64,000 bases of DNA from Basidiobolus meristosporus CBS 931.73 (Eukaryota; Fungi; Basidiobolomycota): assembly GCA_002104905.1 (NCBI GenBank), contig MCFE01000497.1, positions 1 to 64,000 on the forward strand. The letters are read 5' to 3'. Below, one piece after another: positions 3,230 through 57,290 of this stretch; the first letter of the stretch is position 1, and each line of letters opens with the position of its first letter. Below the pieces are notes generated by a model. That model made no database searches, had not been told where the DNA came from, and worked only from the letters and a program-made list of their open reading frames with translations. A program made the position numbers and the translations under genes.

Positions 3230-4970
3230 CAAGTATGGAATGTTGCAATATTCTGAGGAGTATTGGAAGTGATGTGGAGAACTAGAGGATTTACATGTTA
3301 TTCACTTGTAGATTTATTGATCAAAAGTATGGTATTTATACTTTTGATAAAGTAGAGGAAACAAACGTGTAGAGTTTGCTAAGGAAGGTCCCAAGAATAT
3401 GTGTGCAAAGTTTGGGGTCTTTTGGACGACTTTGAGAAAAATAATAATCTGGGTACCTGACAATTTGGTGAAAATATTCTAAGTAAATCCCGACAAGAAA
3501 TCTAGTCAGGACAGAATGCTAATCACAGAATAAGATCTATGTGACTAAGTTAGCATGAATATTTAGGTGACAATTCAATAATTACAACATGGAAGGCATG
3601 CTTTTCAGTGAGCCAGCCTTAAGATCTATGCTCATGGTGTTATTGGCAGATTCCAGCAATGCTTTTGATGTATTGCCTATCTGTATGAGAATTAGGATTT
3701 GGTACTGCTGCTGTAACTTATAAGAGTTCTGAAGATATTGGAACTGATTGGAAGAATATTTTGATTATGTAGTTTTCACTGATTGATTTACTAAATTAAA
3801 AGTGGAGCTTATACTATGCATGGTCTTAGCAAAAAAAAAGCGCAAAGAAAATGCCTATGAAGGTCCCAGGAAAATGTGCGCAAATGCTTTGGATAACTTT
3901 GCGATTTTTCATGTTGTGGGTGTTGTGTCTTGGAGGTATTGCAAGTGATTGGGAGGGCAAGTAGATTATGTGGTTTTTACTTAATGATTTAATGAATGCA
4001 AAAGTAGTATTTGTACCTTTACATGGTCTTGGCATAACAAACACATAGAATAGGTTTAGGAAGGTCCCAAGAGCATGGGGGCAAATATTAGGGCACTTTG
4101 GACAACCCATCAAATTTTCATGTTCTGCACCTGATGTTTTGGTGAAAATATTCTAAGTAAATCCAAGAAAGGAACTTGGTCAGTATTCTCTAAGATTTTT
4201 AGGTGATGATCTAAGTGACTAAGTTAGGTAAATACTTAGATGGAATTACAAATTTTTACAACAGTGGGTACCTGATATTTTGGAAAAAATATGTCAGGCA
4301 AGTCCCAACAAAGAATTTGACCAGAGTTCTCTAACTCTTGCAGACGAATCTTGAAATATTGTAGCAGGGTATATTTGGTTAAATCCCAAATCTTTAAAGA
4401 GCTTTCTTAGCCACACTGCTTCCTATGCAGCCTTGCAGGCTACCATATACTCTGCTACTGCAGTTCAAAGTTCTACAGTTGGTTGTTGTCTTGAATATTT
4501 TGAGATTGCTCCTTTACAGTCCCAATGAGAGTTATGTTGTAATAACTTGTATTGCACCTAAACATTTGACTAGCTTATTCACCTAGATCACTATCTACAA
4601 TTCTTAGAGAACTTTGATCAAATTTCTTGTAAGGCTTTACTTAGAATAATATCAATAACCATAAGGTGCTAGAACATGCAATTGTGATAGGTTGTCCTAA
4701 CACCCCCAAACTTGGCACACATGATCATGGAATCTCCTAAAGATACTCTGCATGCTTGTTTTGCCATGACCATATCAAATTACAAAGACTACTTTCCCAT
4801 ACAATAGAATCATTAATTGAAAACCACACATTCCACTTGTTCTCCCAATCACTTCCAATATCTCCAAAACCCTGACATCAGGTTATGAGCTCTGACCTGT
4901 CACTCCCTAAAATGTTGCTACTGCTTTTAATGGAGCTTTTCTCTCTGTGAAAAAGTTGGATGGATCTTAC
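3230..4970. mobile_element. Cluster of decayed Ty1/Copia LTRs and short internal remnants
   Basis: Repeated degenerate matches to the 349-bp Copia LTR (for example 3930-4262 ending ttttacaaca, and 4536-4880 followed by PBS-like ggttatgagc and a gag start). Confidence 0.75.
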
Positions 4971-7900: not shown

Positions 7901-8215
7901 GGCCTCTAAAACCATGGTTCATCCAGAATCAGTGCCCAGGAATATCCCAGATGTGATCATTCTAATGCCAGATGCCAGGAGATCCAACCAGACAAGAAAT
8001 AGCTCCAATTACTATATCAATGAGGGTGCAAACTTAGCCTTTGCCTATTCAGTCCATATTAATGAACCCCAGACTGTAAAAGAGGCCCTAAGTAGTATTT
8101 GGATAAGGTTTTGGAGGTCTGCAATGACTAAGGAATATCAGGCCCTGATGGAAAATCAAACTTGGGACTTAGTCAAATTACCAATCAACCAAAAATCAAT
8201 TGGATACAGATGGGT
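4971..8215 (+). mobile_element. Decayed, 3'-truncated Ty1/Copia element (5' LTR 4971-5302, PBS 5303-5314, gag-PR-IN pseudogene, start of RT)
   Basis: LTR ends CTCTTACAACA, then GGTTATGAGCCC. Broken frames match gag (KLDGSNYQMWKVKMKM), protease (WYIDSGAS), integrase (ENGGEY, PQQNGVAE) and RT start (ENQTWDLVKLP). Cut at ~8215 by a CMC transposon end. Confidence 0.9.
7113..7463 (-). mobile_element. Copia solo LTR nested in the integrase of the Copia at 4971-8215
   Basis: TGTTG...CAACA ends with a perfect 5-bp TSD ctatg at 7108-7112 and 7464-7468. Confidence 0.9.
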
Positions 8216-10464
8216 CCTGTATGAAAGATAATTTGGCCCTGCATGTGGATCCAATTCAGATCAACCATCAGGATCCCATTTAGAGACCATCTTAGTACTA
8301 GCAGCTTGGAATTAGTGACCCTCTTAACAATCTTATGATGGGATTACAATGGTGTTTTGCTAATTCTACCACCAAATAAAGGGATAAACTTGACAATATT
8401 TTATTGGTGCTGTGACAATAATTGCATGGTATTGTTGTAGTCTTTTGGCACTCTACAACTATTTCAAGTGGATCCAACTGGCCAGGACATCCAATTGCCA
8501 TATATGATAAGAAACCTGATGGTATTTTGATGGCCTCACTGCAAGATGCTTATGGCATTATATTGGCAGTATGATGGCCTACAGCTGGCTCTTTATAATG
8601 CTACTATACCAATTTACCACATGGTATTTCCTTTTTCTACCTCCCATTGTGCAATTCATATATTCCACTGTAGAATCACCCCTCTCTATTTGCTTACCCA
8701 CTACTACCTTGGGTACTCCACATATAGTTTGAATCAAAAAGAAAACCATGGCCTCCTGCTTACTAACCTCTACAAATGCGCACACCTGCCACAATTGACA
8801 TACTTCTATCAACTCAACTTTATGGCTTTTAAGTGTGATACTTGCAAAGTTGCCATATACCTTGTACTGCTGGTAACATATACATCTTGCAAACATATGC
8901 TTGGTTGTAGCCACATCTGCCATGAATACCTCCTGAATATCCGCAAAGAACATCTTGGTATTTCACCAATATATTCCTTCTCCATGCTGGATTCTAGTCC
9001 CCCTTAAAGGTGCACTCTGGCTTTTGTTTGTGCAAATTCTGTATTAAATGGTGTAGAAGTTGGCTTGTGACCAAGAGAAATCTGGCATACCTTGATAGAG
9101 TTTTCTTAATAAAAATTAGCTGCTTGTTGCACCCAACCCAACTTTGCATTACATAACTTATTACCCACACATTGGGGCTGCTTAGCTTCTCAATGCCATT
9201 GGCATAGGTGTCTCCATGTGCACATTTGTCCTCAGTATTTTCCAACTCTTCCTGGCTGTCCTTCTTGTGCCAACTCATCAAGTCCATGACAGACTTGAAA
9301 GTAATATTCTGGATGAGATTGGGATATGGTAATAACCGCAACTTGACTTGTCTTCCTATCTCCCCACACATCTGCTCCATAGGAAACTCCCAAAAGGTGA
9401 AGTAAGGCCCAATATTCTCAACACACCAAGCAAGATGGAGTAGCAAATGGATACAGTAGTGGCAGATATCTATATGTTCAGCTTTATGTTTGTAGTATAG
9501 CCACTCAAATCCTGTCACAAACTCTTTGCGCAACAGCTGTAGATGTGTCAAGTTGGCATTGGTGATCTGCTTCTGGATAAATATTCCTATAGTGTCCACA
9601 TATGATTCCCAATGCTTCTAGTGTACACTTGGTAGGAATGTGTTCAGAACACTACTTGTATGAATACATATCCAGTTCATCCAGTCTTTGCATTTGCATT
9701 GTTGCATATGCATATGAATATAAACTGGAGCCTGTGAGAAGTACTTGGGGTAGTGGATACTCTGTGATATCTTGTCAATTCTTTCAAATTTCTCCGGTAT
9801 CACAAAGGGCTTTTTAGCTTGAAATGCCCCATGTACAACTTGGTAAATAGTACAGGGATATAGTTGCAAAAGCAAATGCATTGCTCCCAGTGGAAAGCTT
9901 TTGTTCCAACTGATACCCTCTATCTTAAGTATCTCTGGTTTCCAATTGACTCCATATTCTAGCCAATGGCTTATAGCTTGCAAACTTTGCTGCAATTGCA
10001 TGCTGACTTCTGTATGTTCTCTCTGTGGAAAGATGATGTTCTTAGTGCTGGTGTTTGGGTAATTATAATGTGTGTGAGCTGTGGAGTAAGTCCCCTGGAT
10101 CTCACACATTTGACAGCAATACCATCCCTTATGCTTGGAAGAACCTGCTATCTTGCTGATGGTTGGGGTATCTCCAATGCAGATAATAATAGGCACTTTT
10201 ACATGACAGTCACTTACTGTTATCCCACTGGAAAGCATACAAAATTTATCCAGCAATGGATACAGGTAGCTATCCAGGTTGGATGGTGATTTAGGCCCAA
10301 ATACCAGTGAGACTACCATCAAATTATTGCTCTGATACAGTAAGATGAGTGGCAGATTCAGATTGATGAGAATCAGTGGCTGGCAGGATTTGCTGTTAGA
10401 GTACTTGTTTAACAAGAATCCATCAAGTGCTAAAGCAAAGGCATGGTCATACATACCTTCAAGG

Positions 10465-13400
10465 TGTTGTAAGAGTCTTGGAGATATTGGAAGTGATTTG
10501 GAGAACAAGTAGATTATGTGGTTTTCACTTAATGATTTATTGAATGTAAAAGTAGTATTTATACTTTTACCTGGTCTTGGAATTACAAACACATAGAATA
10601 GGCTAAGGAAGGTCCCAAGAACATGTGTGCAAAGTTTGGGGCTGTTTGGACAACTTTGAGAATTTTCATATTCTGGGTACCTGGCATTTTGGTGAAAATA
10701 TTCTAAGTAAATCCCGACAAGGAATTTAGTCAGTATTCTCTAGGATTTGAAGGTGATGATCTAAGTGACTAAGTTAGGTGAATATTTAGGTGGAAATACA
10801 AATTTTTACAACACTCCCACTCAGCTAAATGTTCATACTGACTAGTCCTAATTTTGACCTAAGATATTCAAACTTGTCTCTAGCTAATGGTTTGGTAAAT
10901 ATGTCTGCAATCATTTCATCTGTAGGACAGTAAACTAAGCTAACTAAGTTATTCTCTATAGCTTCACGTATGAAATGATGTCTAATATCTATGTGCTTGG
11001 TTCTAGCATGAAAAGTTGGATTTCTACCTAATTGCATACATCCTTGATTATCTTGAAATAAAGTAATAGGCGTTTTTTGACATAGGCCTAAATCTGTTAA
11101 GAGTTTTCTTAACCACATTGCTTCTTTTGTAGCTTCACAGACTGCCATATACTCTGCCTCTGTAGTAGAAAGTGCTACGGTTGGTTGCTTTCTTGAATTC
11201 CATGAAATTGCTCCTTTACAGTAAAGAAAGGTATATCCTGTGGTGGAACTTCTGTCTTCCAAATTTTGTCCCCAATCAGCATCAGAGTATCCCGCAAGAT
11301 CCTGTTCTGAGTCCTTATAAGTGTATCTTAAGCAGATATCAGCAGTTCCTTTTAGGTATCTAAAAATCCGCTTAACTGCTGCAATATGATCAGATCCATA
11401 GTTCTGATTATGTTGGCTGACAACTCCCACTGAATATGAGATATCTGGACGTGTTCCAAGCATGATATACATCAGACTGCCGACCATAAATTGATAAGGA
11501 AAGTCAGGGCTTTCAGATGGCACCAAGCTCTCTCGATTTGGTTGAGTTTTGACCAAGTTAAGGTTTGTCTCCATTGGGGTAGCTGCCGGTTTACAGTCTT
11601 CCATTTTGTACTTCTTTAGTATATCTTGAATATACTTGGATTGGCTTAGGGTGATGGTCTGGGTACTTCTGTCTATGGAGAACTTAATCCCTAAGTAGTA
11701 ACTAAGTTCTCCTAGATTGGACATCTTCAACTCCTTAGATAGGTCAGATTCAGTCTCTTCCAATGTTTCTAGGTTATTGGCGGCTATAATAAGATCATCC
11801 ACATATAGAGCTAATAGAACTGGATTTGCTCTATCTGGCTTATAGTATATACTATAGTCAGCATTACTTCTTTTGAAACTCAAAGATTCCAAATAAGAAT
11901 CTATCTTGCAATTCCAGGCTCTTGGTGATTGTTTGAGACCATATAGTGACTTTTTAAGCTTGCAGACCAAATGGGGGTTATCTTGGTCAACAAGCCCATC
12001 AGGCTGGTCCATATACACATCCTCATCAAGTTCTCCATTCAAAAATGCAGTTTTTACATCCATTTGATGAATAAAAAACTTATATTTGGCTGTAATAGCC
12101 AATATTAATCTGATGGAATTAAACTTGGCTACCGGGGCAAAGGTCTCAGTATAGTCAAGTCCTTTTGTTTGAGAGTATCCTTTGGCTACAAGTCTTGCTT
12201 TGTATCTTTCAATTGTACCATCAGCCTTGTATTTTGTCTTGAAGACCCATCTGCATCCAATTGATTTTTGGTTGATTGGTAATTTGACTAAGTCCCAAGT
12301 TTGATTTTCCATCAGGGCCTGATATTCCTCAGTCATTGCAGATCTCCAAAACTTTGTCTGAGGGCTATTTAGGGCCTCTTTTACAGTCTGGGGTTCATCA
12401 ATATGGACTGAGTAGGCATAGGCTAAGTTTGTACCCTCATTGATATAGTAATTTGGGCTATTTCTTGTCTGATTTGATCTCCGGGCATTTGATACTGGAA
12501 CAATCACTTCTGGGATATTACTGGGCACTGATTCTGGCTGAACCACGGTTGTAGAGTCCTCTGGAGTGAAAAAATTTTCATTGTTTTGCTCTGATTCAAT
12601 CCTGACCATTGGTGGACTTGAGATCAAATTTCCGTCATCATCTGATGTCATTTTTTGTGAAAATTTTGAATTTTCATCAAACAACACATCCCTGGACTTG
12701 ATAAGCTTCTTTGCTTTGGTATTGTAGAGTCTGTATGCCTTACTCTCATTGCAGTAGCCCAAAAATATGCATTTTACACTTATTGGCTCAAATTTTGACT
12801 GATTTCCGGCCAGTTTTTTGGCATATGCTGTACACCCAAATATTCTTAGATGTTCTGCACTTGGTCTGTATCCATACCATGCTTCAAATGGAGTATAATC
12901 ACGAAGTATTCTGTTATAACTCCTATTTTTAAGATATACAGTAGTGGCAACTGATTCCGCCCAAAAATCATAGGATAATTTTGGATCATGGATCATAGAT
13001 CTTGCCATATCAATTATTGATCTGTTAGCTTGTTCTGCTACTCCATTTTGCTATGGGGAGTATGGTACAGTAGTCTCTTGCTTTATCCCATGAATTTTGC
13101 AGAAGTGGATGGAGAGTTTTGAGGTATATTCTCCACCATTGTCAGAGCGTATTTTCTTGATTTTTCCACCAGTTTCTCTCTCCACCATGGCTTTAAACTC
13201 CCTGAGCTTAGACAGAGCTTCTTCCTTTCTCTCCATGAAGTAGACCCATGTGTATCTTGTATAATCATCAATAAAAGTGATTAAACACTTCATCCCGCCT
13301 AAGGATAAATTTTGCATAGGTCCACACAGATCTGAGTGAATTAGATCTAATTTTTTCTTAGTTTTGATTAACCCAGAGCTCTTGAACGGTTGTCTGGCTT

Positions 13401-15148
13401 GTTTCTCATATATGCAGGCTTGACAGTGCTCCAAATTAGCTGGGGGATCAATTTTCACTCCAGAAATTAGCTGATCTTTGATCATTTTACGCAAATAATC
13501 AAAATTGATGTGTCCAAATCTCCTGTGCCAAAGCATTGGTGTTTCTTCATTTAAGTTACTTATATTGGCTTCCAGATATGATGGAATATAAGTCAACTTG
13601 TATAGATTCTGATCTCTGATGCCCAAAGCAATATGGGCACCATTTTGATCAGTGATCCTGCATCCAGAATTGTCAAAACTGAAACTGAGTCCTTCTGCTG
13701 TGGCCTTGCTTACAGAGAGTAGGTTCTTGGCTATTTCTGGTACATAGGGTACTTCTTTAAAGGTCAGTGTATGGCTTCCTTCACTGCTTCTAAGGTTTAC
13801 TTGGATAGTCCCTTCTCCCACTGCATCAAGTGTTCTATCGTCACCCATGAAAACCTTCTTAATTGGAATTTCTTGATATTGGGTAAAAAGTTCTTTTTGG
13901 TGTGTAAAGTGTTGAGAAGCTCCAGAGTCAATATACCACGTCTGAGAATCCTTGTTTGTGGTCATATTTAGTGCAGATATGAAAAGTCTATCTTCAGTTG
14001 TTGCAGCATTTCCATATTCAGGCTTCTTTTGCTGATAAACTCTCTTTTTGAAACACCGGTCTGATGTGTGTCCTTTCCTTTTGCAGTAGTTGCAAAATAG
14101 GTTGCTGTTGCCTTTGTAGGGTCTTGGGTACCTCCTTTGTTGGTTATCATTGCTTATTAAAGCATTTCTTCTTCCTTCTTATTGGCGCTTGATTTTCTTA
14201 ATTCTTCATCCAGGAGCCTTCCATATACATAAGTTAAGGTCAAATCTTCAGTTCTGGACTCTAGGGCTGATACAAGGCCCTGAAACCTGTCTGTCAGGCT
14301 ATTCAGGATGGTAACTATCACATCCTCATCAGTAGTTGGTACGCCCACAGATTCCATCTCATCTACCAGCAGGGTAATTCTGTTAATTAGATTTTTCATT
14401 TCTTCTCCTGGCAGCATCTTTGTAGTAAAGAATTTTCTTCTCAGATACATTTTCTTGGCAGCTGAACATGACTGGAAGGTGTCTTTTAATGCCTTCCAGG
14501 CATTCTTTGCCGTTTTTGCTCTTGAGCATTGAATTAGCAATTTGTCTTTGACATTAAGGCAAATGCAGTTAAAGGCACTTTGTTCTTTCTTCTGGTACTT
14601 TAAGGCTTCCTCTCCCACGTTTTTAGGAGGGCATTCTTCTCCCATGACAATATCCCAAAGGCCTCTTTCTTGTAGCAGCATCTTCATCTTCACCTTCCAC
14701 ACTTGGTAGTTAGATCCATCCAACTTTTCAGCAGAGGGAAAAATTCCAGTAATAGCAGTAGTAGACATTGCAGAGAGTGACAGCTTGGGGCTCATAACCG
14801 GTTGTAAGAGTCTTGGAGATATTGGAAGTGATTTGGAGAACAAGTAGATTATGTGGTTTTCACTTAATGATTTATTGAATGTAAAAGTAGTATTTATACT
14901 TTTACCTGGTCTTGGCATTACAAACACATAGAATAGGCTAAGGAAGGTCCCAAGAACATGTGTGCAAAGTTTGGGGCTGTTTGGACAACTTTGAGAATTT
15001 TCATATTCTGGGTACCTGGCATTTTGGTGAAAATATTCTAAGTAAATCCCGACAAGGAATTTAGTCAGTATTCTCTAGGATTTGAAGGTGATGATCTAAG
15101 TGACTAAGTTAGGTGAATATTTAGGTGGAAATACAAATTTTTACAACA
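10465..15148 (-). mobile_element. Full-length, recently inserted Ty1/Copia retrotransposon
   Basis: LTRs 14800-15148 and 10465-10813 are both 349 bp with about 2 visible differences. PBS GGTTATGAGCCC at 14799-14788, PPT GAGTGGGAG next to the 3' LTR, TSD caaag (15149-15153) versus caagg (10460-10464). Inserted in the copy A transposase. Confidence 0.95.
10825..14790 (-). pseudogene. Copia gag-pol (gag, CCHC knuckle, PR, IN, RT, RNase H) with one 1-nt deletion (~14170) and one premature TAG (13051)
   Basis: ORFs 14157-14927, 13051-13965 and 10825-13008 join into one frame: CNYCKRKGHTSDRC, WYIDSGAS, HSDLCGP/FIDDY/SDNGGEY, YKARLVAKGY, LYVDDL, YSDADW, TKHIDIRHHF. Sibling copies have the extra A (gaagaaaatgct) and CAG at these sites. 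Confidence 0.93.
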
Positions 15149-32180: not shown

Positions 32181-33372
32181 GTCTTCTGGTGCTTCCTGCC
32201 TTCTAAAACTGACTGAGATAGATCATATATATCCTTCTGATCTAGGCATAACTTTCTTGGACTGATATCACTGTCACAGTATTCAGATCTTCCCTTTGCA
32301 TCTTGATAGGCTTGATTTGGTATCACAGCATACCACAGCTTGTCTTTGTATATCCCACACATTTGCTCCACAGGAAATACCCAAAAGGTGAAGCAAGGTC
32401 CAAGATTCTCAAGACACTGTGCCAGATGGAGTAGCAAATGGATACAGTAGTGGCAGATATTTACATGTTCAGCTTTATGCTTATATTGTGGCCACTCAAA
32501 TCCCACAAACACTTGTTGCACAAAAGCTGTGGATGCATGAAGTTGGCATTGTTGATCCACTTCTGTATAAACATTCCTACAATATCAACATTTGACTCCC
32601 AGTGTTTCCAATATACTCTTAGTAGAAATGGTTTCAAAAGGCCATTTGAATAAATACATATCCAGTTCATCCAGTCCTTGCACTTGTATTGTTGCATAGG
32701 CATATGAATGTTGATTGGAGCCTGCAAAAAATACCTAAGGTAGAGGATACTCTGCAATATCTTGCCAGTTCTTTCAAATTTCATAGGTATCTCAATGGGC
32801 TCATTTAGCTTGAAATGCCCTATGTATAAATTGGTTGTCAGTATAGGGATATTATTGAAAGCAAATGCATTACTCCCAGTAACATGGTTTTGCTCCAGCA
32901 GATACTCTCTGTATTTGGTATCTCTAGCTTTCAATCAATTCCATATTCCAGTCAATGACTCACAGCTTGCCAACTTTGCTGTAATTGCATGCTGACTTCT
33001 TTGTGTTCTCTCTACATAACAATGATGTTCTTAGTGTTGGTGCGTGCGTTATATTCATATATATGAGTTATGGATTGAGTCTCCATGGTCTCTTGCATTC
33101 AGAAGCAATACTGTCCATTGTGCCCAGACAAGCTGGATATCCTGCTGATAACTGGGGTATCCTCAATGCAGATAATCATACGTGCTTTGACATGTTGGCC
33201 ATTTACTGTTATCCTGCTGGAAAGCACACAAAATGCATCCAACAATGGATGCAGGTAGCTGTCCAGGGTGGACAGTGATTTAGGCCCAGATATCTGTGAG
33301 ATTGCCATCCAATTTCTGCACTGCTACTGTAAGATAGGTGACAGATTCAGGTTGAAGAGAATCAGTGCTTGT

Positions 33373-33492
33373 TCCAGAAGTTTCAGAGTTGCTTTCCAAC
33401 CCAATTGCATGAAAGGAGCTCAAGTTACTTTGTGTGGCAACTTGCATAACTTCTTGAGCAGATATAATTCCTATTGGTGTTCCAGGTTCCAT
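33373..33492 (-). pseudogene. Fragment of a divergent DNA-dependent RNA polymerase largest subunit (RPB1/beta-prime region around the bridge-helix/trigger-loop), probably viral
   Basis: MEPGTPIGIISAQEVMQVATQSNLSSFHAIG aligns by eye with the conserved PGExVGxxAAQSIGEPxTQMTLNTFHxAG motif. It fuses directly to CMC transposase sequence (cactgattctc) at ~33370. Confidence 0.7.
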
Positions 33493-33606
33493 GATTCATG
33501 CATATATATATATTCGTCAACTTTTTGAACATAACATTTTTTGGATTGAACATTTAAATCTCATTACTAAATAAGATCTATTTAAGATTCTAACTTTAAA
33601 TCACCC

Positions 33607-34116
33607 ATGTCCCCAGAAAATTTAGGAAAACAAGCTTTATCTGATATTGTTGAATCTGCCAACAAGATTATTGCGGGCATGATTTATACAGTCATGTCTG
33701 ACTTTAGCAGCAAACTTATTAAAGAAGGCTTAGATTCCAATACTGTTCTCAAATGCACTAACAAACTTAGCTCCAATTATCTTGGTGAAGGCGTTAAAAT
33801 TAGAAAAAAGCCTGCTCCTAGAGCTCCTAAGGCTCCTGGTACTACTAAATCTTCTAGTACTACTAAAAGTTGTTCCAAGCCTACTCCTAAAACTCTTACT
33901 TGGGAACCTCATCCTGAAGACCCAGATAATTATTCTTTCACCAGAGACATTGTACTTAAGAAGGGCCTTCCTGTATGTTATAACAAGAACAAGAAGGTTG
34001 TCTATGTTGGTGGTAAAGATGAGGTATATGACCTCGAAGTTGAAGATGCTATGCTCTTGAGTAACTATAACCTTGTTTGTGATATGTCTTTTGCTGGTGT
34101 TCCTAAAGCGGAATAA
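33607..34116 (+). CDS. Intact intronless 169-aa hypothetical protein, Lys/Pro/Thr-rich centre, probable large-DNA-virus origin
   Basis: Open ATG-TAA frame with strong T-ending codon use (GCT/CCT/ACT/TCT/GTT) unlike the host gene or the TEs. Preceded by an AT-rich spacer and followed by TATTTAAAA-type repeats. No resemblance to any TE in the window. Confidence 0.7.
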   Translation: MSPENLGKQALSDIVESANKIIAGMIYTVMSDFSSKLIKEGLDSNTVLKCTNKLSSNYLGEGVKIRKKPAPRAPKAPGTTKSSSTTKSCSKPTPKTLTWEPHPEDPDNYSFTRDIVLKKGLPVCYNKNKKVVYVGGKDEVYDLEVEDAMLLSNYNLVCDMSFAGVPKAE

Positions 34117-34119
34117 ATA

Positions 34120-34290
34120 AGATATGTTTTTGTCTTAAAACTATTTTTTAAAAGATCTTAGACCAAAGTATATTTAAAACCAAATTTAAAAACTATATTT
34201 AAAAGATCAAAAACCATATTTAAAAACCAAATATCTAAAACCAAACTTAAAAAACATATTTAAAAAACTATATTTAAAAACTAAAAAAGC
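34120..34290. repeat. Extremely AT-rich imperfect tandem repeats (AAAAC(C/T)ATATTTAAAA-like)
   Basis: tatatttaaaa(a), catatttaaaaa and related variants recur about six times directly after the stop of the 169-aa ORF. Confidence 0.8.
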
Positions 34291-35434
34291 TAATAAGGCA
34301 AAGGTAGACAGACACACATGCACCAGCACAACCTTTACTAATGAAGAAGTGTAGTTCTACTCAAGAAGCTCTCAGTCAAAGTAGCAGTGAAGGACCTGCA
34401 GTGATAAAGCAAAAGGTAAAGGGAAAAAAGTTGCCCAAGCCAGAGATAGGGAAGCATGAGAGAAATGCTGCAGTCCTTGCCTATCAATGGTGTAAGCTCA
34501 GAACTGACTGAATCACATCATAGCCATGAAGAATTACTAACAAGAAAATAGATGTTTTCACAAAAGCTGGAAGCACAGCCATATGACCTACACAATACTG
34601 AGGTAGATGAGTTTTCTGAGACAAGAAATTTGACTTCCACAGCCTCCACACCATCCACTGTTGATAGAGTGGAGATCTTGCTGACAGGCCAAGTAGCAGC
34701 ATCAAGAGCTCAAAGGTTATCACAATGCCTTCAGTAGAATTTTGGAACATTAATAGGCACACCAAAAGGTTGCAGTACTTCTTCAAGAGCAGTGCTCAAG
34801 AAATCACATATGGATACTGCAAGGAGTTATTGCAAAGGCTGGCAGATGAGGTTCTAGACCTTGCAGTAATGGTGGAAGACCAGGACATATGGAACCAGTG
34901 AAAGAACAGTGGCATAAAGCTGTAGGGTTCCTGCCAAAGTCATGGAAACAGAGCATTGCAGCCAAATACTTATTGAGCAGTGGATTTTAATGGAGTTACT
35001 TCTTAATTGCAGGGTTAGGCTTGTTGTTAGTTTAGGGTACAGTGACTTGCATAGGCCAATACAATTGGCATTTGAGGTGCCACTAAAGTTCCAACAGAAA
35101 GAACTAAACTTATATGCATGAAAAGTAAGAGAAACAGTTGAGTCAGGAAGTAAGGAGTGTGAAGAAGAGGCAATAGTCAATCAATACACACAAGTGTAGG
35201 AGGGTATAGAATATCTAGGATGAGAAAGTGAGCAAATTGACAGGGAACCAATCAAGAGTCACTTATACATTGTTGTGATGAAAATTTTTGACAGGGTTTT
35301 TTGTGAAATCTGGGGTGCAATTATTTTTCAATGGTCTCTGGACCGTGTCCTGGCAAGATCAGTACCTTTTAGTCATGGGTTGTTAGTTTTGTGATGACCT
35401 TTTGATGGGATCATCTCAATAATTTTTCATAGGG

Positions 35435-48223: not shown

Positions 48224-49107
48224 TTACTCTTCATAATGCTCCAGACACATTTCTCTCAGTGGATGTCTTCTTGTATGAACATACTGTGCATTTATAAGTA
48301 TCTTAACTCTTTTACCTATTCTGCTGTATTCTCCTATATATGACTTTGTCTGTATTTACTTGCCAATATCCTGAATCTCTTCAGATATCCAAATGTGTGC
48401 TCTACCCTCACTCTGAAATGATTAAATATCTCATTGTAGAGCTTCTGCTTCCTGCTAAGCACACCATTTCTTGGCTTCCTATAAGCTGTAATACATCCTA
48501 ATCTCTGACAATCCTCTCCTATATAGGCTAAGTCTGCCATACATTTCTCCCCTCTACTGAATTCAGGATGATTCTCTACCCAGAGTGCTTTGTCATGCCT
48601 ACTTCCAGCAAATGGCCCACTAAACCAGATGATGTTATCCTCAATGTCAGACAGTGCTTGAAACTTCACACAGTGTGCCTTGTACTTGCCAGAATAAAAG
48701 TGCCTCTGCCCTCTAGAAGGTCTGTTAATCCTCACTGGGAAGGTATCCAAAATACTCCTGATACGGAACTTGTTGCTGAACACTCTGGGATATGGAAGTC
48801 TATTGGAGCTTCTGAACATAGTATTCCAAGCTTGCTCTAAGTCATTCATACCCTCTGCAAGGTGGTTCTCCTTTGCTGTCAGCTGGGAATGAAAGCTTCT
48901 AGGACTTTTGTTGCCATGGATGGTGAGATGAAACCTTGTAGAGCAATAGTTCTTGTAATAGCAGAGAAGCTTAACAAGGGATCTCCTTGAGTAGATTGGG
49001 GTTGATGGTCCACAGTACTTGGAATAGATCTCCTCTAGGATGTTAAAAGGAAATTCAGTGGTAGTGATGGGATTGATGAGAAAAGACCATTCAGATGAGT
49101 AAGTCAT
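48224..49107 (-). CDS. DDE_Tnp_4-type (IS5/PIF/Harbinger group) transposase; a 2-bp TA slippage at ~48338 truncates the last ~38 aa
   Basis: Motifs ILDTFPVRINRP, YSGKYKAHCVKFQ, GPFAGSRHD, MADLAY, RVRVEHTFGYLKRF. Removing one TA from agtcatatatag restores ...SHIGEYSRIGKRVKILINAQYVHTRRHPLREMCLEHYEE-stop at 48224. Confidence 0.9.
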
Positions 49108-49466: not shown

Positions 49467-50714
49467 ATGGTCCCCATACCAAGCCTCAACTCATCTTTAG
49501 TACAGCCAAGACAAAACCCATCCCCCAGCTCACAAGCACGGTCTGGACAGGAGAAGTTGATGTCAGATCTGTTTGAGTTCTTGCCAAATGATTTTAGTAT
49601 GGCCCAAGTGTCTATGATGAGCCTTCAAACAGATATTTGGGCACTACATATTAATCTAGCAGAACTAGACACCTCAGAGAGTTGACAAAGATGGAAGAAT
49701 TTAAGTAGAAAGCTGTGGCATGAGTTCTACATCAAGATGCCAGCCAATGTATGTAAAAAGATACATAACAAGACAAGTATTGAAATCAAGAATGAGCTAA
49801 GAGTGAGGAGATTTGACAAAGAAGCCACGCGGGAACAACTTTGCGCCCAATTTGCACAGTATGGGCTGGACGCGTCCATTTGTGCCTCAACTTTGGGAAC
49901 CAAAGAGATTTTGAATGAGTTTTGGCCTCAAATGACTAATGTACTACGTGATATATTAGTAGAGCTAAGTAGCTTCCAAGAGCAATATACACAGGACTTA
50001 TCCAGGCAACAGCTCCAAAGTATCAGACAGAGGGTAAGTGAATATCTTGAGGAATCAGATGGTGAGCTTCAGGAGGAAGAATACTGGCCGCAAGCAACAT
50101 CATCCAGATTGCGCCAGCACACCTTGCTGGATTCCCTACCATCTCTTGCAACCACAGCGCACCGGCACACGTCAGTCCAGACCATGCCAACACCCTTGTC
50201 CAGAACACCCTGCATTGAGTCAATGCGTGTTGGGTCAACGCGCGTGCTTCAGAGCAAAACTACAAGAACTTGCCAAACTGCTCATTTAGACAAGAGTCCA
50301 TTGGAGTGGACCAAGTTGCGTCAACATGCAGCATCACATCAAACTCAGCCAAGGGTCATCTCAACGCGTCAAGGCGCGCCTGCGCGTGCCGTTTTGCCTG
50401 ACCATCAGCAAGTTACTTCTGGTGAACTGACTGATGATGACCAACATGAAGTGCCTCAACCACTGGAGCCCTTAGCAAGTAAAAGAACGCGTCAGCGTGT
50501 GGCACTACAGGCCTGTTCAGCTGGTTCAGTTGGAGCAATTCAGCACGGCCAAGCTGCAGCATTGCACTCATCAACTAGGAGGCAAAATACTGACTACAAA
50601 TACACAAGTAGCCAAGATGATAGTCAGCCAGGAAGTAGTATAGGTGTGCAAAGTGAGTCACTACCAAATGCTTCAGTAGTAATCCCTGTGAGAAAAAAAC
50701 CCAGGAGAAGATGA
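49467..50714 (+). CDS. PHIS partner (ORF2) protein, ~415 aa, with SAP-like motif and C-terminal NLS; one CGA-to-TGA type stop at 49683
   Basis: ORFs 49467-49685 and 49737-50714 are in the same frame, separated by a single TGA. The ATG at 49467 is conserved in the 37-39 kb copy. Ends RKKPRRR. Confidence 0.75.
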
Positions 50715-52352: not shown

Positions 52353-55300
52353 TGTTACAAGTCTTGGTATAAGAGTTGTAGAGGAATAGGGAGTTTAGCT
52401 AGTATTGTATTCACTAAAACTTGAACTGATTTTTATTGAGGTTCCAGCAGCTCCTTATATACATTTTGCCAGATCAATTGCTGACTAATTGTATTTCCTA
52501 ATGTAGGTTGTGGCTGATGACTCATTTGATTGCATCATCATCCCCCAATAAGATCCTACTTAATATATCTATTTCTGTCTGATAAGGATCTGCTGATTCA
52601 TTTGCTGACTAATGCTACTGATTTCATAGATAATACTGATGTACTGATAACCTAAACATATACTAACTGATTTGACTAAAAACTGATCTAACTTAAACAT
52701 TCAAGCGGCAGATCATAACATTCTCCCCTACTAAAGTTGAGAGGGTTCTCCTGAATCTCTTTTCTTGTGATACCAATATCTTGATGGTTCAGTATTATCA
52801 GCAAGTCTTGCAAGCTTGAGTCTGTCCCTATGCACTAAGTCTTCCCGGATATTGCCTTGTTTGTCCACCAGTTGGTAAGTTGCAAATGGACATTCTCTGA
52901 TGATCTTGAATGGTCCTGTCCATTGTGGCTCAAACTTCTTCCGAGTGTTGTTTCTTAGCAATACAAAGTTCCCAACTGTCAATGCTTCTGGTGCTATAGT
53001 CTTATCAAATCTCTGCTTCATCTTTTCTGCACTTTGAGATACTTTGGTCTGTGCCTCTTGACGTCTTTGTTCCAGTTGCTGGTGTCTACTTGGCTGACTG
53101 AGTTCATCTTCTAAGGTGTCTGTAAGCTTTGGTTGTGTGAGATCTCCTGGAATCCTTGGTTCACATCCATAAACTAAGTAAAATGGTGATTGCTGGGTGG
53201 TGTTGTGTACTCTGACTCTGCATGCAAAGAGTGCTTGGTCTATATACTCATCCCATCTACTGACAACTCCATTTGCATACTTGGTCAGCATTTTTCCAAA
53301 TAATCCATTAAACCGCTCAGTGACTCCATTAGTTCTGGGGTGATATGCCGAGGTTTTCAAGTGTCTGATCTGCTGCATTTCCAGGTAAGCCTCTAATGTC
53401 TTTGCCATAAAGTTTGCACCTCTATCGGATAAGATCTCCACAGGGCATCCAAACTTCATCAGGATCTCATGGTAAATGAAACTTGCAACTTCTTGTTCAC
53501 TGGCTATTGGTACAGCTTTAGCAACTGGCCATTTAGTGGCATGGTCAATTGCTACTAGGATCCAACGGTTGCATTTCCTGGTAGTTGGCAGTCTTCCAAT
53601 AAAGTCAATTCCCCATCTCTCAAATGGTCTTACAGGCTCCAAAGGGAAGAGTTCGGCAATTCTTTGTGGCTGGCCTTGATTGATTTGGCAGTTTGGGCAT
53701 GTTTTTACTAGCTTCTCAATGTCTTGTTTCATTCTGGGCCACCATGCTCTGGCTTTTACAAGGCTATAGGTTCCTTCAATCCCAAGATGTCCATATCCAT
53801 TGTGTAGCTTATGTATTAAATCCAGGCGAGCAACATAAGGACAATAGGCAATAGGGCTTCCATCAACAATTCGGTAGAGTGTTTCATTCTGTACAACAAA
53901 TTTGCTGGCCTCATCACGGATTATCTTCTTGATATCTTCATCCACCTCATTAGGAATGGCTTGGTCCTCCAAGTACTTTGGTAATAGGCTAGGCCAATCT
54001 GATTCATGCACCAAGTTGAGTTGTGCAACTTGATCTAATCTTGATAAGGCATCAGCAACCGTGTTGTTTTTTCCAGGACAGTAGACAATCTCCAGGTCAA
54101 ATTGCTGAATGTATTCACTCCATCTTGTCATTCTTCTAGAGAGTACCTTCTGAGTAAATATATACTTGAGGGAGGCATGATCAGTCTTCACAGTGCATTT
54201 GACTCCTTCAATATAGCATCTCCATGTCTTCAAACAGTGTATTATAGCAAGCATCTCCTTCTCATGAACTGGATAGTTTTGTTCTGCTGAGTTCAGTTTC
54301 TTGGATTCAAAGGCAACAGGGTAGTCCTTTCCCTCGTGTTCTTGGCTCAGCACTCCACCAATTGCATAATCTGAAGCATCTGTGCACAGAGTGAACTCTT
54401 TTCTGAAGTCTGGTATTCTTAAGCTTGGCAGCTTAGCAAGTTCATTCTTTAGTGTCTGGAAGGCAGTCTCACAAGCTATGTCCCACTTGTAGGTATTGTC
54501 TTTCTTGAGGATATCAGTTAAAGGGGCTGCAATACTTGCAAATGACTTGACAAATCTCCGATAATAGGAAACCATTCCAAGGAAGGATCTGAGTTCTGAT
54601 ATGCTATGGGGCTGCTTCAAATTCTTGATTACTTCCACCTTCTTGGGGTCTAAGGTTACTCCTGTGCTAGTCACTATGTGTCCCAGATATTCTACGTGTT
54701 CCTTGAAGAATTCACACTTGGCTAGCTTGCCGTATAGCTTGTTCTCTCTTAGTTTCTTCAAGACCTTTTCAATGTGCACCATGTGATCCTTTTCTGTCTT
54801 GCTGTATATCAATATGTCATCCAGGTAGATTATCACAAACTTGTCTAAGTACTCCTGAAAGACAGTCTGCATCAGCGTCATGAATGTTGCAGGGGCATTA
54901 GTGAGGCCAAAACTCATGACTAAGTACTCGTAATGTCCATATCTGGTCCTGAATGCTGTCTTAGGGATATCTTCTGGTTTCACCCTAATCTGGTTGTATC
55001 CTGACATGAGGTCGATCTTGCTGAAAATAGTGGCTCCATTAAGTTGGTCCAAAAGCTCATCAATCCGAGGTATGGGGTACTTATTCTTGACGGTAACTGA
55101 GTTCAGGGCTCTGTAGTCAATGCACATCCTAAGTGTTCCATCCTTCTTTTTCACAAAAAGCACTGGTGCTCCCCAAGGTGACTTGCTGGGCCTGATGTAT
55201 CCTTGCTCCAATAGCTGATCAATTTGTTTCTTCATTTCCTCCAATTCCAATGGACTCATTCTGTAAGGTGTCTTGCTCACTGGAGGGCTATCTCCTGTGT

Positions 55301-57290
55301 CAATGGCATGATCCACATCTCTGACTGGTGGTAGGCTTACAAGCTCATCTGGAAACACGTCTGAATATTTCTTCAAGAGAGTCTGGACCTGCTGGGGTGC
55401 TGGGATAGAGGAATCCTCCTGTAATACCGCCATGAGGAACATCTGGGTACCTTTTCTAAGTGCTCTACAGAACTGGGTCTTGCTAAGTTCACTTGTCTCA
55501 CACACACTGGAATTGACCAAGTTGAAATCCAGCCTGGCAGGTAATAGCTCATAGGTCTTGTTGTCTTTTTGGATCTGAGTAGCATGGGTTCTCCAGTTGA
55601 TTGATGGATTACGACAAAATAGCCAGGTTTTCCCAAGTACAAGGTCAAACTTGCAGTTCCCAAATATATAAGCCTGTAGGTTTTCTTCATAGTCATTGAT
55701 CTTCATTCTTACTGGCTGGGTAATACGGTTGATTATGTGGGAGTTCCCATCAGCTGTGGAGACTGAAGTTGATTTGGTAGGTTCCAAGTTGATTCCAGCT
55801 TTCAAAGCAAATTGCTCTGACATGTACTCATGCGATGCTCCTGAGTCAATCATGATCTTGGCAGGTACTCCATTGATTGCTCCATTCAGGTACAATAACT
55901 TCCCTGAGTTTGAAGTCATTTGGGACAAGTACTCTTCTGTCATATGGAAGGTGAGTTCCGAGTCTTCTTCAAGCTCATCTTCCTCATTATTGTGTTCATG
56001 GGACTCAATATGGTTGAAGGTTCTTGTTGGCTGGTGTCCATTTCTTCTCTGAGGGCAGTACTTTGCAATATGTCCCTGCTGGTGGCAATTGAAGCAAAGT
56101 CCTCTCTTCTTGCATTCTTCTGAGGAGGGATTCTTCTGCATAGCGTCTATTTCCATTGGTACTGCTTCTGATTGTCTTCTTTCATAATGATTATAGCCTT
56201 TCTGACTAGTCACTGTAGGCTTCCCAACTCCAAACATAGCTGAGTCATAGTCAATGGCAATCTTGATGGCTTCTTCAATAGTCTGAGGTCTTCGGTAATT
56301 GACTTCCTTGCGAGTTCTTTCTTTCAACCCAACAATAAAGTATTCAACTTGATCCAAGGGGTCCATTCTTTCAATTTGTCCAAGTAGACATCTGTACTCA
56401 TAGATGTATTCTTGCACCATTCCTTTCTGTCTGAGTGTCTTTAACTTCCTTCTTAGTAGTGTCTGCTGGTGTGGAGGTTCAAAAGCATCCTGAATTTCCA
56501 ACACAAACTCATCCCAGGTAGAGATTGTAGAGCATCCCATCATAGTAGCTGACCTGATCTTGTTGTGGTACCACTGTAAAGCTGCATCTGCCAGGTAAGA
56601 AGCTGCATAATGCAACTTGCTCTCTGGAGCAATTCCTTTAGCTTTAAAAGCTTCTTCAATCTGAAAGAGCCAAGTTCCCAGGTTTTCATTGACTCTGCCA
56701 TGGTACCGGTTGACCTTCACACTAAAGTTGCTCTTGACAGGGCTTTGCTGGCTCTGAGCCATGGTAGTCATTCCTTGTTGCTGTTGGCTGAGGATCTGGA
56801 GTAGCTGTTGCTGTTGGGCAAGGATTTGCTGCATGGCATTCTTCCATTCTTGATTGTCCGACATCTTGAGGGTGGTTTCTTCTTTCTTCAGGAGGGAGGT
56901 TTCTGGTTATCGCTGCTACCAATGTTACAAGTCTTGGTATAAGAGTTGTAGAGGAATAGGGAGTTTAGCTAGTATTGTATTCACTAAAACTTGAACTGAT
57001 TTTTATTGAGGTTCCAGCAGCTCCTTATATACATTTTGCCAGATCAATTGCTGACTAATTGTATTTCCTAATGTAGGTTGTGGCTGATGACTCATTTGAT
57101 TGCATCATCATCCCCCAATAAGATCCTACTTAATATATCTATTTCTGTCTGATAAGGATCTGCTGATTCATTTGCTGACTAATGCTACTGATTTCATAGA
57201 TAATACTGATGTACTGATAACCTAAACATATACTAACTGATTTGACTAAAAACTGATCTAACTTAAACATTCAAGCGGCAGATCATAACA
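52353..57290 (-). mobile_element. Intact, very recent Ty3/Gypsy retrotransposon
   Basis: LTRs 56923-57290 and 52353-52720 are 368 bp and identical on visual comparison. PBS TGGTAGCAGCG at 56921-56911, PPT GGGGAGAA next to the 3' LTR, 4-bp TSD cttg (52349-52352, 57291-57294). Confidence 0.97.
52731..56864 (-). CDS. Single-frame Gag-Pol polyprotein, 1377 aa (gag, CCHC, PR, RT, RNase H, IN; no chromodomain)
   Basis: [63 protein letters not shown] and a terminal GPF motif. Confidence 0.97.

What the first reader, a model, noticed from the sequence alone, without database searches (positions are those of the whole stretch)
33370..34290. Probable giant-virus (NCLDV-like) DNA fragment embedded in the transposon nest
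Seen: ~0.9 kb matching none of the five TE families. It carries two head-to-head intronless frames separated by ~115 bp of AT-rich spacer, T-ending codon bias, and an AT-only repeat tail. Known: compact divergent genes, short AT-rich intergenic promoters and self-encoded divergent RNA polymerases typify nucleocytoplasmic large DNA viruses, and endogenised NCLDV sequence is known in some fungi. Inference: this is a piece of a large DNA virus (or virus-like cytoplasmic plasmid) that infects or infected this host, possibly of an undescribed lineage.
Basis: partly seen in the sequence, partly recalled or inferred. Interest (0 to 1): 0.82.

Follow-up and report, generated by a model that had tools for sequence, protein, structure and literature searches.

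The report
Dead giant-virus fragment in Basidiobolus
This 0.9-kb stretch is a decaying, duplicated scrap of a large DNA virus (giant-virus relative) that once integrated into the genome of the fungus Basidiobolus, a kind of viral fossil already described for this fungus in 2020.

Summary
Window 33367-34285 is single-copy and sits between two repeat families. It carries two head-to-head frames, a 114-bp AT-rich spacer and an AT-rich tandem-repeat tail.

- **Minus frame:** only the first 42 codons of a stand-alone gene for the C-terminal piece of RNA polymerase subunit 1 ("RP1c").
- **Plus frame:** an intact 169-aa gene from a rare family with only 25 representatives in 1.84 billion proteins.
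- **Source:** the piece is 97.5% identical to part of a remnant of at least 7.4 kb on Basidiobolus meristosporus scaffold MCFE01000334.1, where RP1c is whole.
- **Relatives:** the same RP1c/small-gene pair recurs on metagenomic and IMG/VR contigs of 35-137 kb. These carry family-B DNA polymerase, D5 primase-helicase, capping enzyme, SNF2 helicase, TFIIS, RPB2, the N-terminal RPB1 piece and DUF5757.
- **Selection:** lineages differ with dN/dS 0.09-0.17, while the two Basidiobolus copies differ neutrally (0.92).

Gong, Zhang and Han (2020) described exactly such endogenous viruses ("fundsalphaviruses", with split RNAP subunit 1) in B. meristosporus. The viral reading is supported, but the lineage is already described and the fragment is almost certainly inert.

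The parts
33367..33492 (-). 5' remnant of the viral gene for the C-terminal piece of RNA polymerase subunit 1 (RP1c, archaeal-A''-like). One break only: a truncation that leaves the first 42 of 359 codons, with no internal stop.
   Evidence: Pfam RNA_pol_Rpb1_5 at profile positions 69-108. All 42 residues are identical to the whole 359-aa gene at L003 8722-9801. DNA homology to L003, L001 and L002 ends at 33362-33367.
33493..33606 (.). 114-bp AT-rich spacer between the two divergent start codons. It is a candidate bidirectional viral promoter / 5' leader region; this role is inferred.
   Evidence: GC 0.237. In the alignment of window 33480-33620, which includes 13-14 coding bases at each end, 94 of 142 columns are invariant among four copies whose coding DNA is only about 80% identical. 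Long invariant blocks lie next to the 169-aa gene. Spacer length is 112-114 bp in all four Basidiobolus-type copies.
33607..34116 (+). Intact 169-aa gene of a small virus-specific family of unknown function. The predicted fold is an N-terminal helical hairpin, a disordered basic linker and a small C-terminal beta domain.
   Evidence: No Pfam or PDB sequence match. Word-search hits are 78% identical over the full length (P0001, P0003) and 94% identical over 83% of the query (P0002), the latter a Basidiobolus meristosporus protein. There are 25 representatives in 1.84e9 proteins. Homologues sit next to RP1c in L007, L008 and L010-L014. AF2 model pLDDT is 78.
34117..34285 (.). AT-rich 3' tail with a tandem array (34170-34285, period 13/14/27). 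It was copied together with the genes from the parent remnant.
   Evidence: TRF. GC 0.16. The tail is shared with L003 10424-10592. It is not shared with L001, where homology stops 4 bases after the stop codon.
32339..33366 (.). Left neighbour: an internal part of a repeat family whose other copies carry a Transposase_21 (CACTA/EnSpm-type) ORF. It is cut at the junction.
   Evidence: Copies at 9347-10377 and 21548-20519. Other copies read on past the junction point. Transposase_21 in ORF 9618-10592.
34289..35355 (.). Right neighbour: an internal part of another repeat segment, also cut at the junction.
   Evidence: Copies at 18245-18125 and 17974-16959. The other copy reads on upstream of the junction.

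Best explanation
The stretch is an inert, secondarily duplicated scrap of an endogenous large DNA virus. The virus is of the 'fundsalphavirus' type: a Pithovirus-related member of the nucleocytoplasmic large DNA viruses with RNA polymerase subunit 1 split in two. The host genome is Basidiobolus.

**In the living virus (inferred).** The two genes are transcribed outward from one short AT-rich promoter region.
- One gene encodes RP1c. Together with RP1n and RPB2 it would make the virus's own multisubunit RNA polymerase.
- The other encodes a small conserved protein that always travels with RP1c. I guess it is a nucleic-acid-binding or transcription-associated factor (low confidence).

**History.**
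1. Viral DNA integrated. A remnant of at least 7.4 kb survives on B. meristosporus scaffold MCFE01000334.1 (shown).
2. A 919-bp piece covering the promoter region, 42 codons of RP1c, the small gene and an intergenic AT repeat was later copied into a transposon copy at the window locus. A copy is shown; its direction and mechanism are inferred.
3. Both copies have since drifted neutrally (shown, on few changes).

The fragment does nothing today. RP1c is 88% deleted, and the small gene is intact most likely only because little time has passed.
For: - **Host and paralogue.**
  - Window 33367-34285 matches L003 9676-10592 (B. meristosporus MCFE01000334.1) at 97.5% identity.
  - The window shares transposon families with that scaffold at 85-95%.
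- **Whole RP1c in the paralogue.** L003 holds a 359-aa RP1c scoring 71.9 bits on Pfam Rpb1_5. The gene starts at profile position 69, the archaeal A'/A'' split point.
- **Size of the parent remnant.** In L003, viral homology runs from 3199 to 10423 across five genes, collinear with viral contig L008, and lies between transposons.
- **Conserved pair.** RP1c and the small gene lie head to head in the window, L001-L003, L007, L008 and L010-L014. The small proteins are homologous (32% identity, E 1e-15).
- **Viral context of relatives.**
  - Genes present: PolB, D5 primase-helicase, capping enzyme (guanylyltransferase plus N7-methyltransferase), SNF2 helicase, TFIIS, UDG, XPG, RPB2, RP1n and DUF5757.
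  - They lie on contigs of 13.6-137 kb and on two IMG/VR viral contigs.
- **Selection.**
  - Between lineages dS is 0.67-1.22 with dN/dS 0.09-0.17.
  - Window against L003 gives dS 0.028 and dN/dS 0.92.
  - The L003 copy of the small gene has one in-frame stop.
- **Nothing else viral in the window**.
- **Literature.** PMC7017919 reports endogenous NCLDV in B. meristosporus and B. heterosporus sharing D5, D6/D11 SNF2 helicase, SAM methyltransferase, RPB2, RPB5 and RNAP subunit 1 as separate RP1n and RP1c. Retrotransposons often lie nearby.
- **Weak structural hint.** The only BFVD matches of the small protein's model are weak (E 0.016-0.1), but they are almost all proteins of iridoviruses, marseilleviruses, pithoviruses, orpheovirus and cedratvirus.
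Against: - No capsid or packaging gene (MCP, A32) or VLTF3 was seen in the views of at most 20 kb of the related contigs. Membership of Nucleocytoviricota therefore rests on replication and transcription genes and on the published trees, which I could not rebuild.
- I could not confirm that the L003 locus is one of the elements listed by Gong et al., because their supplements are not held.
- The neutral dN/dS between the two copies rests on 13 scored substitutions (Sd 3.0, Nd 10.0) and cannot exclude weak constraint on the intact window copy.
- The direction of copying (L003-like locus to window) is inferred only from which copy is the larger.
- Chimeric assembly of the window cannot be excluded without reads.
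Confidence: 0.85

Rival explanations
1. A transposon captured the fragment and moved it. A CACTA/EnSpm-type element (or a nest of elements) picked up 0.9 kb of the viral remnant and carried it to this locus, so the copy is a passenger inside a mobile element. This is a rival only for how the copy arose, not for its viral origin.
For: - Both flanks are internal parts of repeats, not ends.
- In another copy in the window (21548 to 16959, minus strand) the homologues of the left and right flanks are collinear. About 2.27 kb lies where the viral piece sits here.
- The left-flank family carries a Transposase_21 ORF.
- Gene-fragment capture by CACTA elements is established in plants (my own knowledge).
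Against: - Only one copy of the viral piece is in the window, and it has different flanks in L003. No second transposed copy is seen.
- The 2.27 kb in the other copy is itself made of further repeats, so the collinearity may reflect nested insertions.
- Element termini and target-site duplications were not identified.
Confidence: 0.2
2. The 169-aa gene has been domesticated. The window copy is kept intact because the host now uses it.
For: - The ORF is intact in the window, while the L003 paralogue has an in-frame stop.
- Its upstream spacer is highly conserved.
- Between lineages dN/dS is 0.11-0.15.
Against: - Between the two host copies dN/dS is 0.92.
- The low between-lineage ratio is equally expected from evolution inside replicating viruses before separate integrations.
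- In all relatives the gene's fixed partner is a viral polymerase subunit, and that partner is destroyed here.
- No expression data are available.
Confidence: 0.07
3. It comes from a virus-like cytoplasmic linear plasmid (yeast killer-plasmid type) rather than a large virus.
For: - Such plasmids encode their own reduced RNA polymerase, helicase and capping enzyme (my own knowledge).
- One related contig, L004, also carries a protein-primed-type polymerase, PF03175.
Against: - Relatives carry an ordinary family-B polymerase with the exo1 domain plus a D5 primase-helicase, TFIIS, UDG and XPG, on contigs of 35-137 kb.
- RPB1 and RPB2 are separate genes, not a fusion.
- L004 has the ordinary PolB as well.
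Confidence: 0.03
4. The polymerase piece is a horizontally acquired archaeal rpoA2 (subunit A'') gene, or a diverged host polymerase gene.
For: - The length-limited word search lists archaeal A'' subunits, and one source names the B. ranarum protein 'Rpoa2p'.
- The best PDB hits are archaeal Rpo1C (E 6e-19), with the same split point.
Against: - Archaeal proteins are only 24-27% identical. Relatives on viral-type contigs are 30-38% identical and share the neighbouring small gene and DUF5757.
- The word search could only see proteins of similar length, which favours split subunits.
- Published trees place the fungal RP1 pieces with NCLDV.
- Host nuclear RPB1, RPA1 and RPC1 are unsplit and match less well.
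Confidence: 0.02
5. Contaminant or chimeric assembly.
For: Cannot be excluded for this window without reads.
Against: - The same sequence, with its own transposon flanks, is present in an independent public assembly on a 92.6-kb scaffold.
- Both junctions lie within one contiguous 64-kb window rich in Basidiobolus repeats.
- One copy carries a premature stop.
Confidence: 0.03

Closest known systems
Endogenous 'fundsalphavirus' elements of fungi (Gong, Zhang & Han 2020, Virus Evol 6:veaa008; PMC7017919)
   Same: - Same host genus and species (B. meristosporus, B. heterosporus).
- RNAP subunit 1 encoded as separate N- and C-terminal genes.
- Linked D5, D6/D11-type SNF2 helicase, methyltransferase/capping and RPB2 genes in relatives.
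- Premature stops and nearby retrotransposons.
   Different: - The window holds only a 0.9-kb secondary copy with one truncated and one intact gene.
- The 169-aa gene, its fixed head-to-head pairing with RP1c, DUF5757 and the AT-rich intergenic repeat arrays are not among the six shared genes listed in that paper.
- I could not check whether this locus is in their tables.
Pithoviridae / order Pimascovirales (Nucleocytoviricota)
   Same: - Published PolB trees put the fungal elements next to Pithovirus sibericum.
- The weak structural matches of the 169-aa protein are almost all to pithovirus, marseillevirus, iridovirus, orpheovirus and cedratvirus proteins.
- AT-rich non-coding repeat arrays between genes recall the Pithovirus genome (my own knowledge).
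   Different: - Related contigs are far smaller: 35-137 kb, with two of 77 and 88 kb named as circular.
- Their polymerase genes are shortened: PolB about 810-845 aa, RPB2 about 950-980 aa.
- No capsid or packaging gene was seen in the parts I could read.
- No tree was built here.
Archaeal RNA polymerase subunit A'' (Rpo1C)
   Same: A stand-alone protein starting at the same point within Rpb1 domain 5, and the best solved-structure matches.
   Different: Only 24-27% identity, and the genomic neighbours are those of a eukaryotic large DNA virus.
Mycodnaviridae (giant viruses of zoosporic fungi; PMC13533422)
   Same: Nucleocytoplasmic large DNA viruses with fungal hosts, including endogenous copies.
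   Different: - That family is allied to Algavirales/Imitervirales and is found in zoosporic fungi.
- Its capsid-gene survey of 2,543 fungal genomes found only Dimargaris among non-zoosporic fungi, and the paper does not mention Basidiobolus.

Membership tests
Endogenous fundsalphavirus-type NCLDV element (Gong et al. 2020) | Resides in a fungal genome; reported hosts include Basidiobolus meristosporus | tested here: met
   97.5% identity to B. meristosporus scaffold MCFE01000334.1, shared transposon families, and repeats on both flanks.
Endogenous fundsalphavirus-type NCLDV element (Gong et al. 2020) | RNA polymerase subunit 1 encoded as separate RP1n and RP1c genes | tested here: met
   RP1c is a stand-alone 358-359-aa gene starting at Rpb1_5 profile position 69. 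Separate RP1n genes of 576-639 aa lie on related contigs L008-L011. The window itself keeps only 42 codons of RP1c.
Endogenous fundsalphavirus-type NCLDV element (Gong et al. 2020) | Linked D5 helicase-primase, D6/D11-like SNF2 helicase, SAM methyltransferase and RPB2 | tested here: met
   All are present on the contigs that carry the closest relatives of both window genes. None is in the window or in the 20 kb of L003 that I read.
Endogenous fundsalphavirus-type NCLDV element (Gong et al. 2020) | Family-B DNA polymerase clustering with Pithovirus sibericum | not tested
   No named reference sequences could be brought in and no tree was built. The claim rests on PMC7017919.
Endogenous fundsalphavirus-type NCLDV element (Gong et al. 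2020) | Signs of endogenisation (disabling changes, host repeats at the borders) | tested here: met
   RP1c is truncated in the window. There is one in-frame stop in the L003 copy of the small gene. dN/dS between the copies is 0.92, and both borders are cut repeats.
Nucleocytoviricota (NCLDV) | Replication and transcription hallmark genes: PolB, D5-like primase-helicase, multisubunit RNAP, TFIIS, mRNA capping enzyme | tested here: met
   Found on related contigs L004, L008, L010-L014 and L016.
Nucleocytoviricota (NCLDV) | [quoted passage not shown] | not tested
   None appears among the Pfam hits in the stretches of at most 20 kb that I could read. The rest of the 35-137-kb contigs was out of reach.
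Yeast-type cytoplasmic linear (killer) plasmids | Small linear replicon replicated by a protein-primed polymerase, with a fused reduced RNA polymerase | tested here: not met
   Relatives have ordinary PolB plus D5 and separate RPB1/RPB2 genes, and are 35-137 kb. L004 has a PF03175 gene in addition to PolB.
Archaeal RNAP subunit A'' | Archaeal genomic context and closest sequence kinship to archaeal Rpo1C | tested here: not met
   24-27% identity to archaeal proteins, against 30-38% to proteins on viral-type contigs that share neighbouring genes.

The most novel reading that the evidence does not exclude
The Basidiobolus-type contigs L001 and L002 (Logan runs ERR14042384 and SRR29713745) carry intact RP1c, small-gene and DUF5757 genes. 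They differ from the B. meristosporus copies at dS about 0.8-1.2 with dN/dS about 0.1. They may therefore derive from a still-circulating member of a clade of small (about 77-137 kb, some circular) split-polymerase NCLDV relatives that infects non-zoosporic fungi. No dsDNA virus has been isolated from such fungi. On this reading the window fragment would be a recent footprint of that virus, and the 169-aa protein a clade-specific partner of the viral polymerase.
Probability: 0.2. Interest if true: 0.7.

Novelty: already known. Interest (0 to 1): 0.3.

Why it matters
The fragment itself is one more viral fossil in a genome where such fossils were reported in 2020, so it changes little. Three by-products have modest value:

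- **A compact marker.** The head-to-head pair of RP1c and a 169-aa gene, with a conserved spacer, marks this viral clade. It recovers intact relatives on 35-137-kb contigs.
- **A post-integration history.** After integration, pieces of the remnant were copied around the repeat-rich genome and then drifted neutrally.
- **Possible extant relatives.** These sequences are closely related, intact and under purifying selection. They are of interest because dsDNA viruses of non-zoosporic fungi remain unisolated.

Tried and rejected
**Searches that gave nothing or too little**
- Pfam and PDB sequence searches of the 169-aa protein found nothing.
- A PDB fold search of its model gave no match with E below 1.
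- The BFVD fold search gave only weak matches. I use them as a lineage hint, not as a function.
- The AlphaFold model of RP1c had pLDDT 38 and was unusable, so I did not run the third fold search.
The RP1c alignment worked instead.
- K-mer enrichment upstream of genes in related contigs gave no shared promoter word that I would rely on.
- The supplements of PMC7017919 are not held, so locus-level overlap could not be checked.
- Rfam and tRNA scans of the window were empty.

**Ideas considered and set aside**
- **Egovirales.** Those viruses have a split PolB rather than a split RPB1, and their hosts are parabasalids and ciliates.
- The other rejected readings (killer-plasmid type, archaeal transfer, host polymerase, contaminant) are listed under rivals.

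**Comparators not fetched**
- The fold search named iridovirus proteins from animals. I fetched, aligned and used none of them.

1. In some searches I used the 13-base unit that Tandem Repeats Finder printed as a consensus as a search pattern. It is identical to the natural stretch at window 34216-34228. Nothing in the verdict rests on those two calls.
2. Note 3 contains a short residue pattern summarising conserved positions of the small-protein family. I have not repeated it here and did not use it in any tool.
Full report
**1. What is in the sequence**

- **The two frames.** Window 33280-33492 (-) is a 70-aa ORF. Window 33607-34116 (+) is a 169-aa ORF. Their start codons face away from each other across 114 bp.
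- **Polymerase match.** The minus ORF matches Pfam RNA_pol_Rpb1_5 at profile positions 69-108 (E 3.4e-6, 27.1 bits, cut-off 28.5). The plus ORF matches no Pfam family and no PDB sequence.
- **Tail.** Downstream of the plus ORF lies an AT-rich tail with a tandem array of period 13/14/27 at 34170-34285.
- **Composition.**

| Segment | GC |
|---|---|
| Spacer | 0.24 |
| Tail | 0.16 |
| 169-aa ORF | 0.38 |
| Whole window | 0.40 |

- **Codon bias.** Half of the plus ORF's codons end in T, against 0.25-0.32 in the transposon ORFs of the window.
- **Flanks.** A self-comparison shows that 33367-34285 has no other copy in the window. The sequence up to 33366 and from 34289 onward belongs to repeat families.
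- **Transposon content.** The window is a transposon nest:
  - copia-type (10825-13965);
  - Ty3-type (52731-56864, a 1377-aa ORF);
  - Transposase_21/CACTA-type (9618-10592);
  - DDE_Tnp_4/Harbinger-type (48334-49107).

The bounds are 33367-34285. The tail is AT-rich, not AT-only. Only the first 42 codons of the minus ORF are foreign.

**2. Host and parent locus**

The 169-aa protein has three word-search hits. One is a hypothetical protein of Basidiobolus meristosporus CBS 931.73 (94% identity). The other two are 78%-identical proteins from Logan assemblies.

The B. meristosporus gene lies on scaffold MCFE01000334.1 (locus L003), next to a whole 359-aa gene. That gene is annotated there as an RNA-polymerase subunit and scores 71.9 bits on Rpb1_5.

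- Window 33367-34285 aligns to L003 9676-10592 at 97.5% identity.
- Many other window segments match L003 repeats at 85-95%. The window is therefore Basidiobolus DNA. I cannot tell whether it comes from the same assembly or from a close strain.
- In L003, translated matches to proteins of related viral contigs run from 3199 to 10423. They comprise:
  - a UDG-like gene;
  - homologues of two small conserved proteins;
  - RP1c;
  - the small gene.
- These genes lie in the same order as on contig L008 and sit between transposons.

The window piece is thus a partial copy of a remnant of at least 7.4 kb. Nothing else in the 64-kb window matches any of 72 proteins from the related contigs.

**3. What kind of virus**

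*The polymerase piece.*
- The 359-aa protein starts exactly where archaeal subunit A'' starts. Its best solved-structure matches are archaeal Rpo1C (E 6e-19), followed by the C-terminus of yeast RPB1.
- In the length-limited word search its relatives are B. ranarum (76%), the Logan contig L001 (81%), two metagenomic proteins (35% and 30%) and then archaeal A'' at 24-25%.

*Gene context decides between these.*

| Locus | Size and source | Genes seen |
|---|---|---|
| L007 | 3.9 kb, JGI metagenome; holds the 35% relative | RP1c, a 149-aa homologue of the window's small protein (32% identity, E 1e-15), DUF5757 |
| L004 | 13.6 kb; holds the 30% relative | PolB, a second protein-primed-type polymerase, SNF2 helicase, TFIIS, UDG |
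| L008 | 19.8 kb, Logan | RP1c(-), small gene(+), DUF5757, RPB2, RP1n, PolB, SNF2 helicase |
| L010-L014 | contigs of 36-137 kb | A conserved block of about 20 kb (listed below) |
| L015, L016 | two IMG/VR viral contigs, 35 and 52 kb | The same gene set |

The conserved block in L010-L014 reads, in order:
1. helicase;
2. capping enzyme (guanylyltransferase plus N7-methyltransferase);
3. PolB;
4. RP1c(-) and the small gene(+);
5. D5 primase-helicase;
6. TFIIS;
7. UDG;
8. XPG.

Beyond XPG the block continues with RPB2 (L012-L014) or with RP1n followed by DUF5757 (L010, L011). L009 shows RP1n, DUF5757 and RPB2 in that order.

Two of the contigs in this group, of 76,673 and 88,462 bp, carry a '_c' suffix. 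I take this to mean that the assembler called them circular, but I have not verified that.

An exhaustive search found only 25 representatives of the small-protein family among 1.84 billion proteins, all 120-203 aa long.

*Literature.* Gong, Zhang and Han (2020; PMC7017919) screened 1,006 fungal genomes.
- They described endogenous 'fundsalphaviruses', related to Pithovirus by PolB, in 14 species of six phyla. The species include B. meristosporus and B. heterosporus.
- The shared genes they list are D5, D6/D11-like SNF2 helicase, SAM methyltransferase, RPB2, RPB5 and RNAP subunit 1 as separate RP1n and RP1c.
- They often found retrotransposons nearby.

That description fits what I see. The later Mycodnaviridae paper found capsid genes only in zoosporic fungi and Dimargaris, and does not mention Basidiobolus. 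Egovirales do not fit.

**4. History and present state**

- **Between lineages.** Nei-Gojobori estimates compare the three Basidiobolus-type lineages: window/L003, L001 and L002. The small gene gives dS 0.83-0.99 and dN/dS 0.11-0.15. RP1c gives dS 0.67-1.22 and dN/dS 0.09-0.17. These genes diverged under strong purifying selection.
- **Between the two B. meristosporus-type copies.** dS is 0.028 and dN/dS 0.92, from 3 synonymous and 10 non-synonymous changes. In addition, the L003 copy has one in-frame stop while the window copy has none. This is the pattern of neutral drift after a recent duplication, though it rests on few changes.
- **State of RP1c in the window.** It has one break, a truncation that removes 317 of 359 codons.
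- **Junctions.** Both flanking repeats are cut at internal points.
- **A collinear copy elsewhere.** In another copy within the window (21548 to 16959 on the minus strand) the homologues of the two flanks are collinear, with about 2.27 kb between them. The viral piece therefore sits inside a transposon copy or nest. It either replaced internal sequence or was captured. I cannot decide which.

**5. How it would have worked in the virus (inferred)**

- **Polymerase.** RP1c, RP1n and RPB2 would form the virus's own RNA polymerase.
- **Promoter region.** The spacer keeps 112-114 bp in all four Basidiobolus-type copies. It has long invariant blocks next to the small gene, although synonymous sites are near saturation. 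That fits a constrained promoter or leader.
- **Small protein.** The model (pLDDT 78) shows helices at 3-39 and 44-60, a disordered basic linker, and a small beta domain at 99-152.
  - Columns at window residues D32, K67, P69 and W99 are at least 90% conserved in 27 sequences.
  - It has no solved structural relative.
  - Its weak BFVD matches (E 0.016-0.1) are nearly all proteins of iridoviruses (some named SAP-domain or 'orf58-like'), marseilleviruses, pithoviruses, orpheovirus and cedratvirus.
  - My guess is a nucleic-acid-binding or polymerase-associated factor, held with low confidence.

**6. Verdict**

The viral interpretation is supported, and the plasmid alternative is not. The lineage and its presence in this very fungus are already published, so novelty is low. 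The fragment itself is almost certainly non-functional.

The most interesting loose end is whether the intact, selected Basidiobolus-type contigs L001 and L002, and the 77-137-kb metagenomic relatives, represent living viruses of non-zoosporic fungi.

**7. Rule-keeping**

- I built no repaired, joined, consensus or ancestral sequence.
- I did not fetch the animal iridovirus proteins named by the fold search.

Noticed in passing
L003 3199-10890 (B. meristosporus MCFE01000334.1): The parent viral remnant has AT-rich tandem arrays in almost every intergenic gap: 3850-4310 (50 bp x 8.6), 7062-7316 (49 bp x 5.3), 8586-8688 (7/14 bp), 10477-10593 and 10629-10890 (50 bp). The window's tail is one of these arrays. 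This recalls the repeat-rich non-coding DNA of Pithovirus (my own knowledge).
   Followed up: partly
L013 and L014 (ENA ERZ26273096 ctg165445_11x_c, 76,673 bp; ERZ25067493 ctg169291_10x_c, 88,462 bp); L010 (137,086 bp): Relatives share a block of about 20 kb of conserved gene order. They lie on contigs of 67-137 kb, two of which have names ending in '_c' (possibly circular). Their PolB (about 810-845 aa), RPB2 (about 950-980 aa) and split RPB1 are unusually short for giant-virus relatives.
   Followed up: partly
L001 1996-4521; L007 79-2052; L008 3639-5795; L009 10001-12103; L015 5645-7975: A DUF5757 (PF19061) protein of 576-841 aa always sits beside polymerase-subunit genes in this clade. Its function is unknown. 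It is absent from the window and from the part of L003 that I read.
   Followed up: partly
L004 233-3034 and 12220-13611: One related contig carries both a protein-primed-type polymerase (PF03175, 933 aa) and an ordinary family-B polymerase. The former may belong to a polinton-like or virophage-like insert.
   Followed up: no
window 1-3000: GC is 0.50-0.57 here, against about 0.40 elsewhere. Two long overlapping ORFs lie on opposite strands (878-1768 +, 962-1843 -), and the plus-strand ORF, the only one scanned, has no Pfam match. Unexplained.
   Followed up: no
window 52731-56864 (-): An uninterrupted 1377-aa Ty3-type polyprotein ORF (gag, protease, RT, RNase H, integrase). This may be a young, complete retrotransposon.
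   Followed up: no
window 49737-50714 (+): A 325-aa ORF in a locally GC-richer stretch (0.47) with no Pfam match.
   Followed up: no
window 33493-33606 and the matching spacers of L003, L001, L002: Long blocks of the spacer are invariant among copies whose synonymous sites are near saturation. The invariant blocks lie mostly in the half next to the 169-aa gene.
   Followed up: partly
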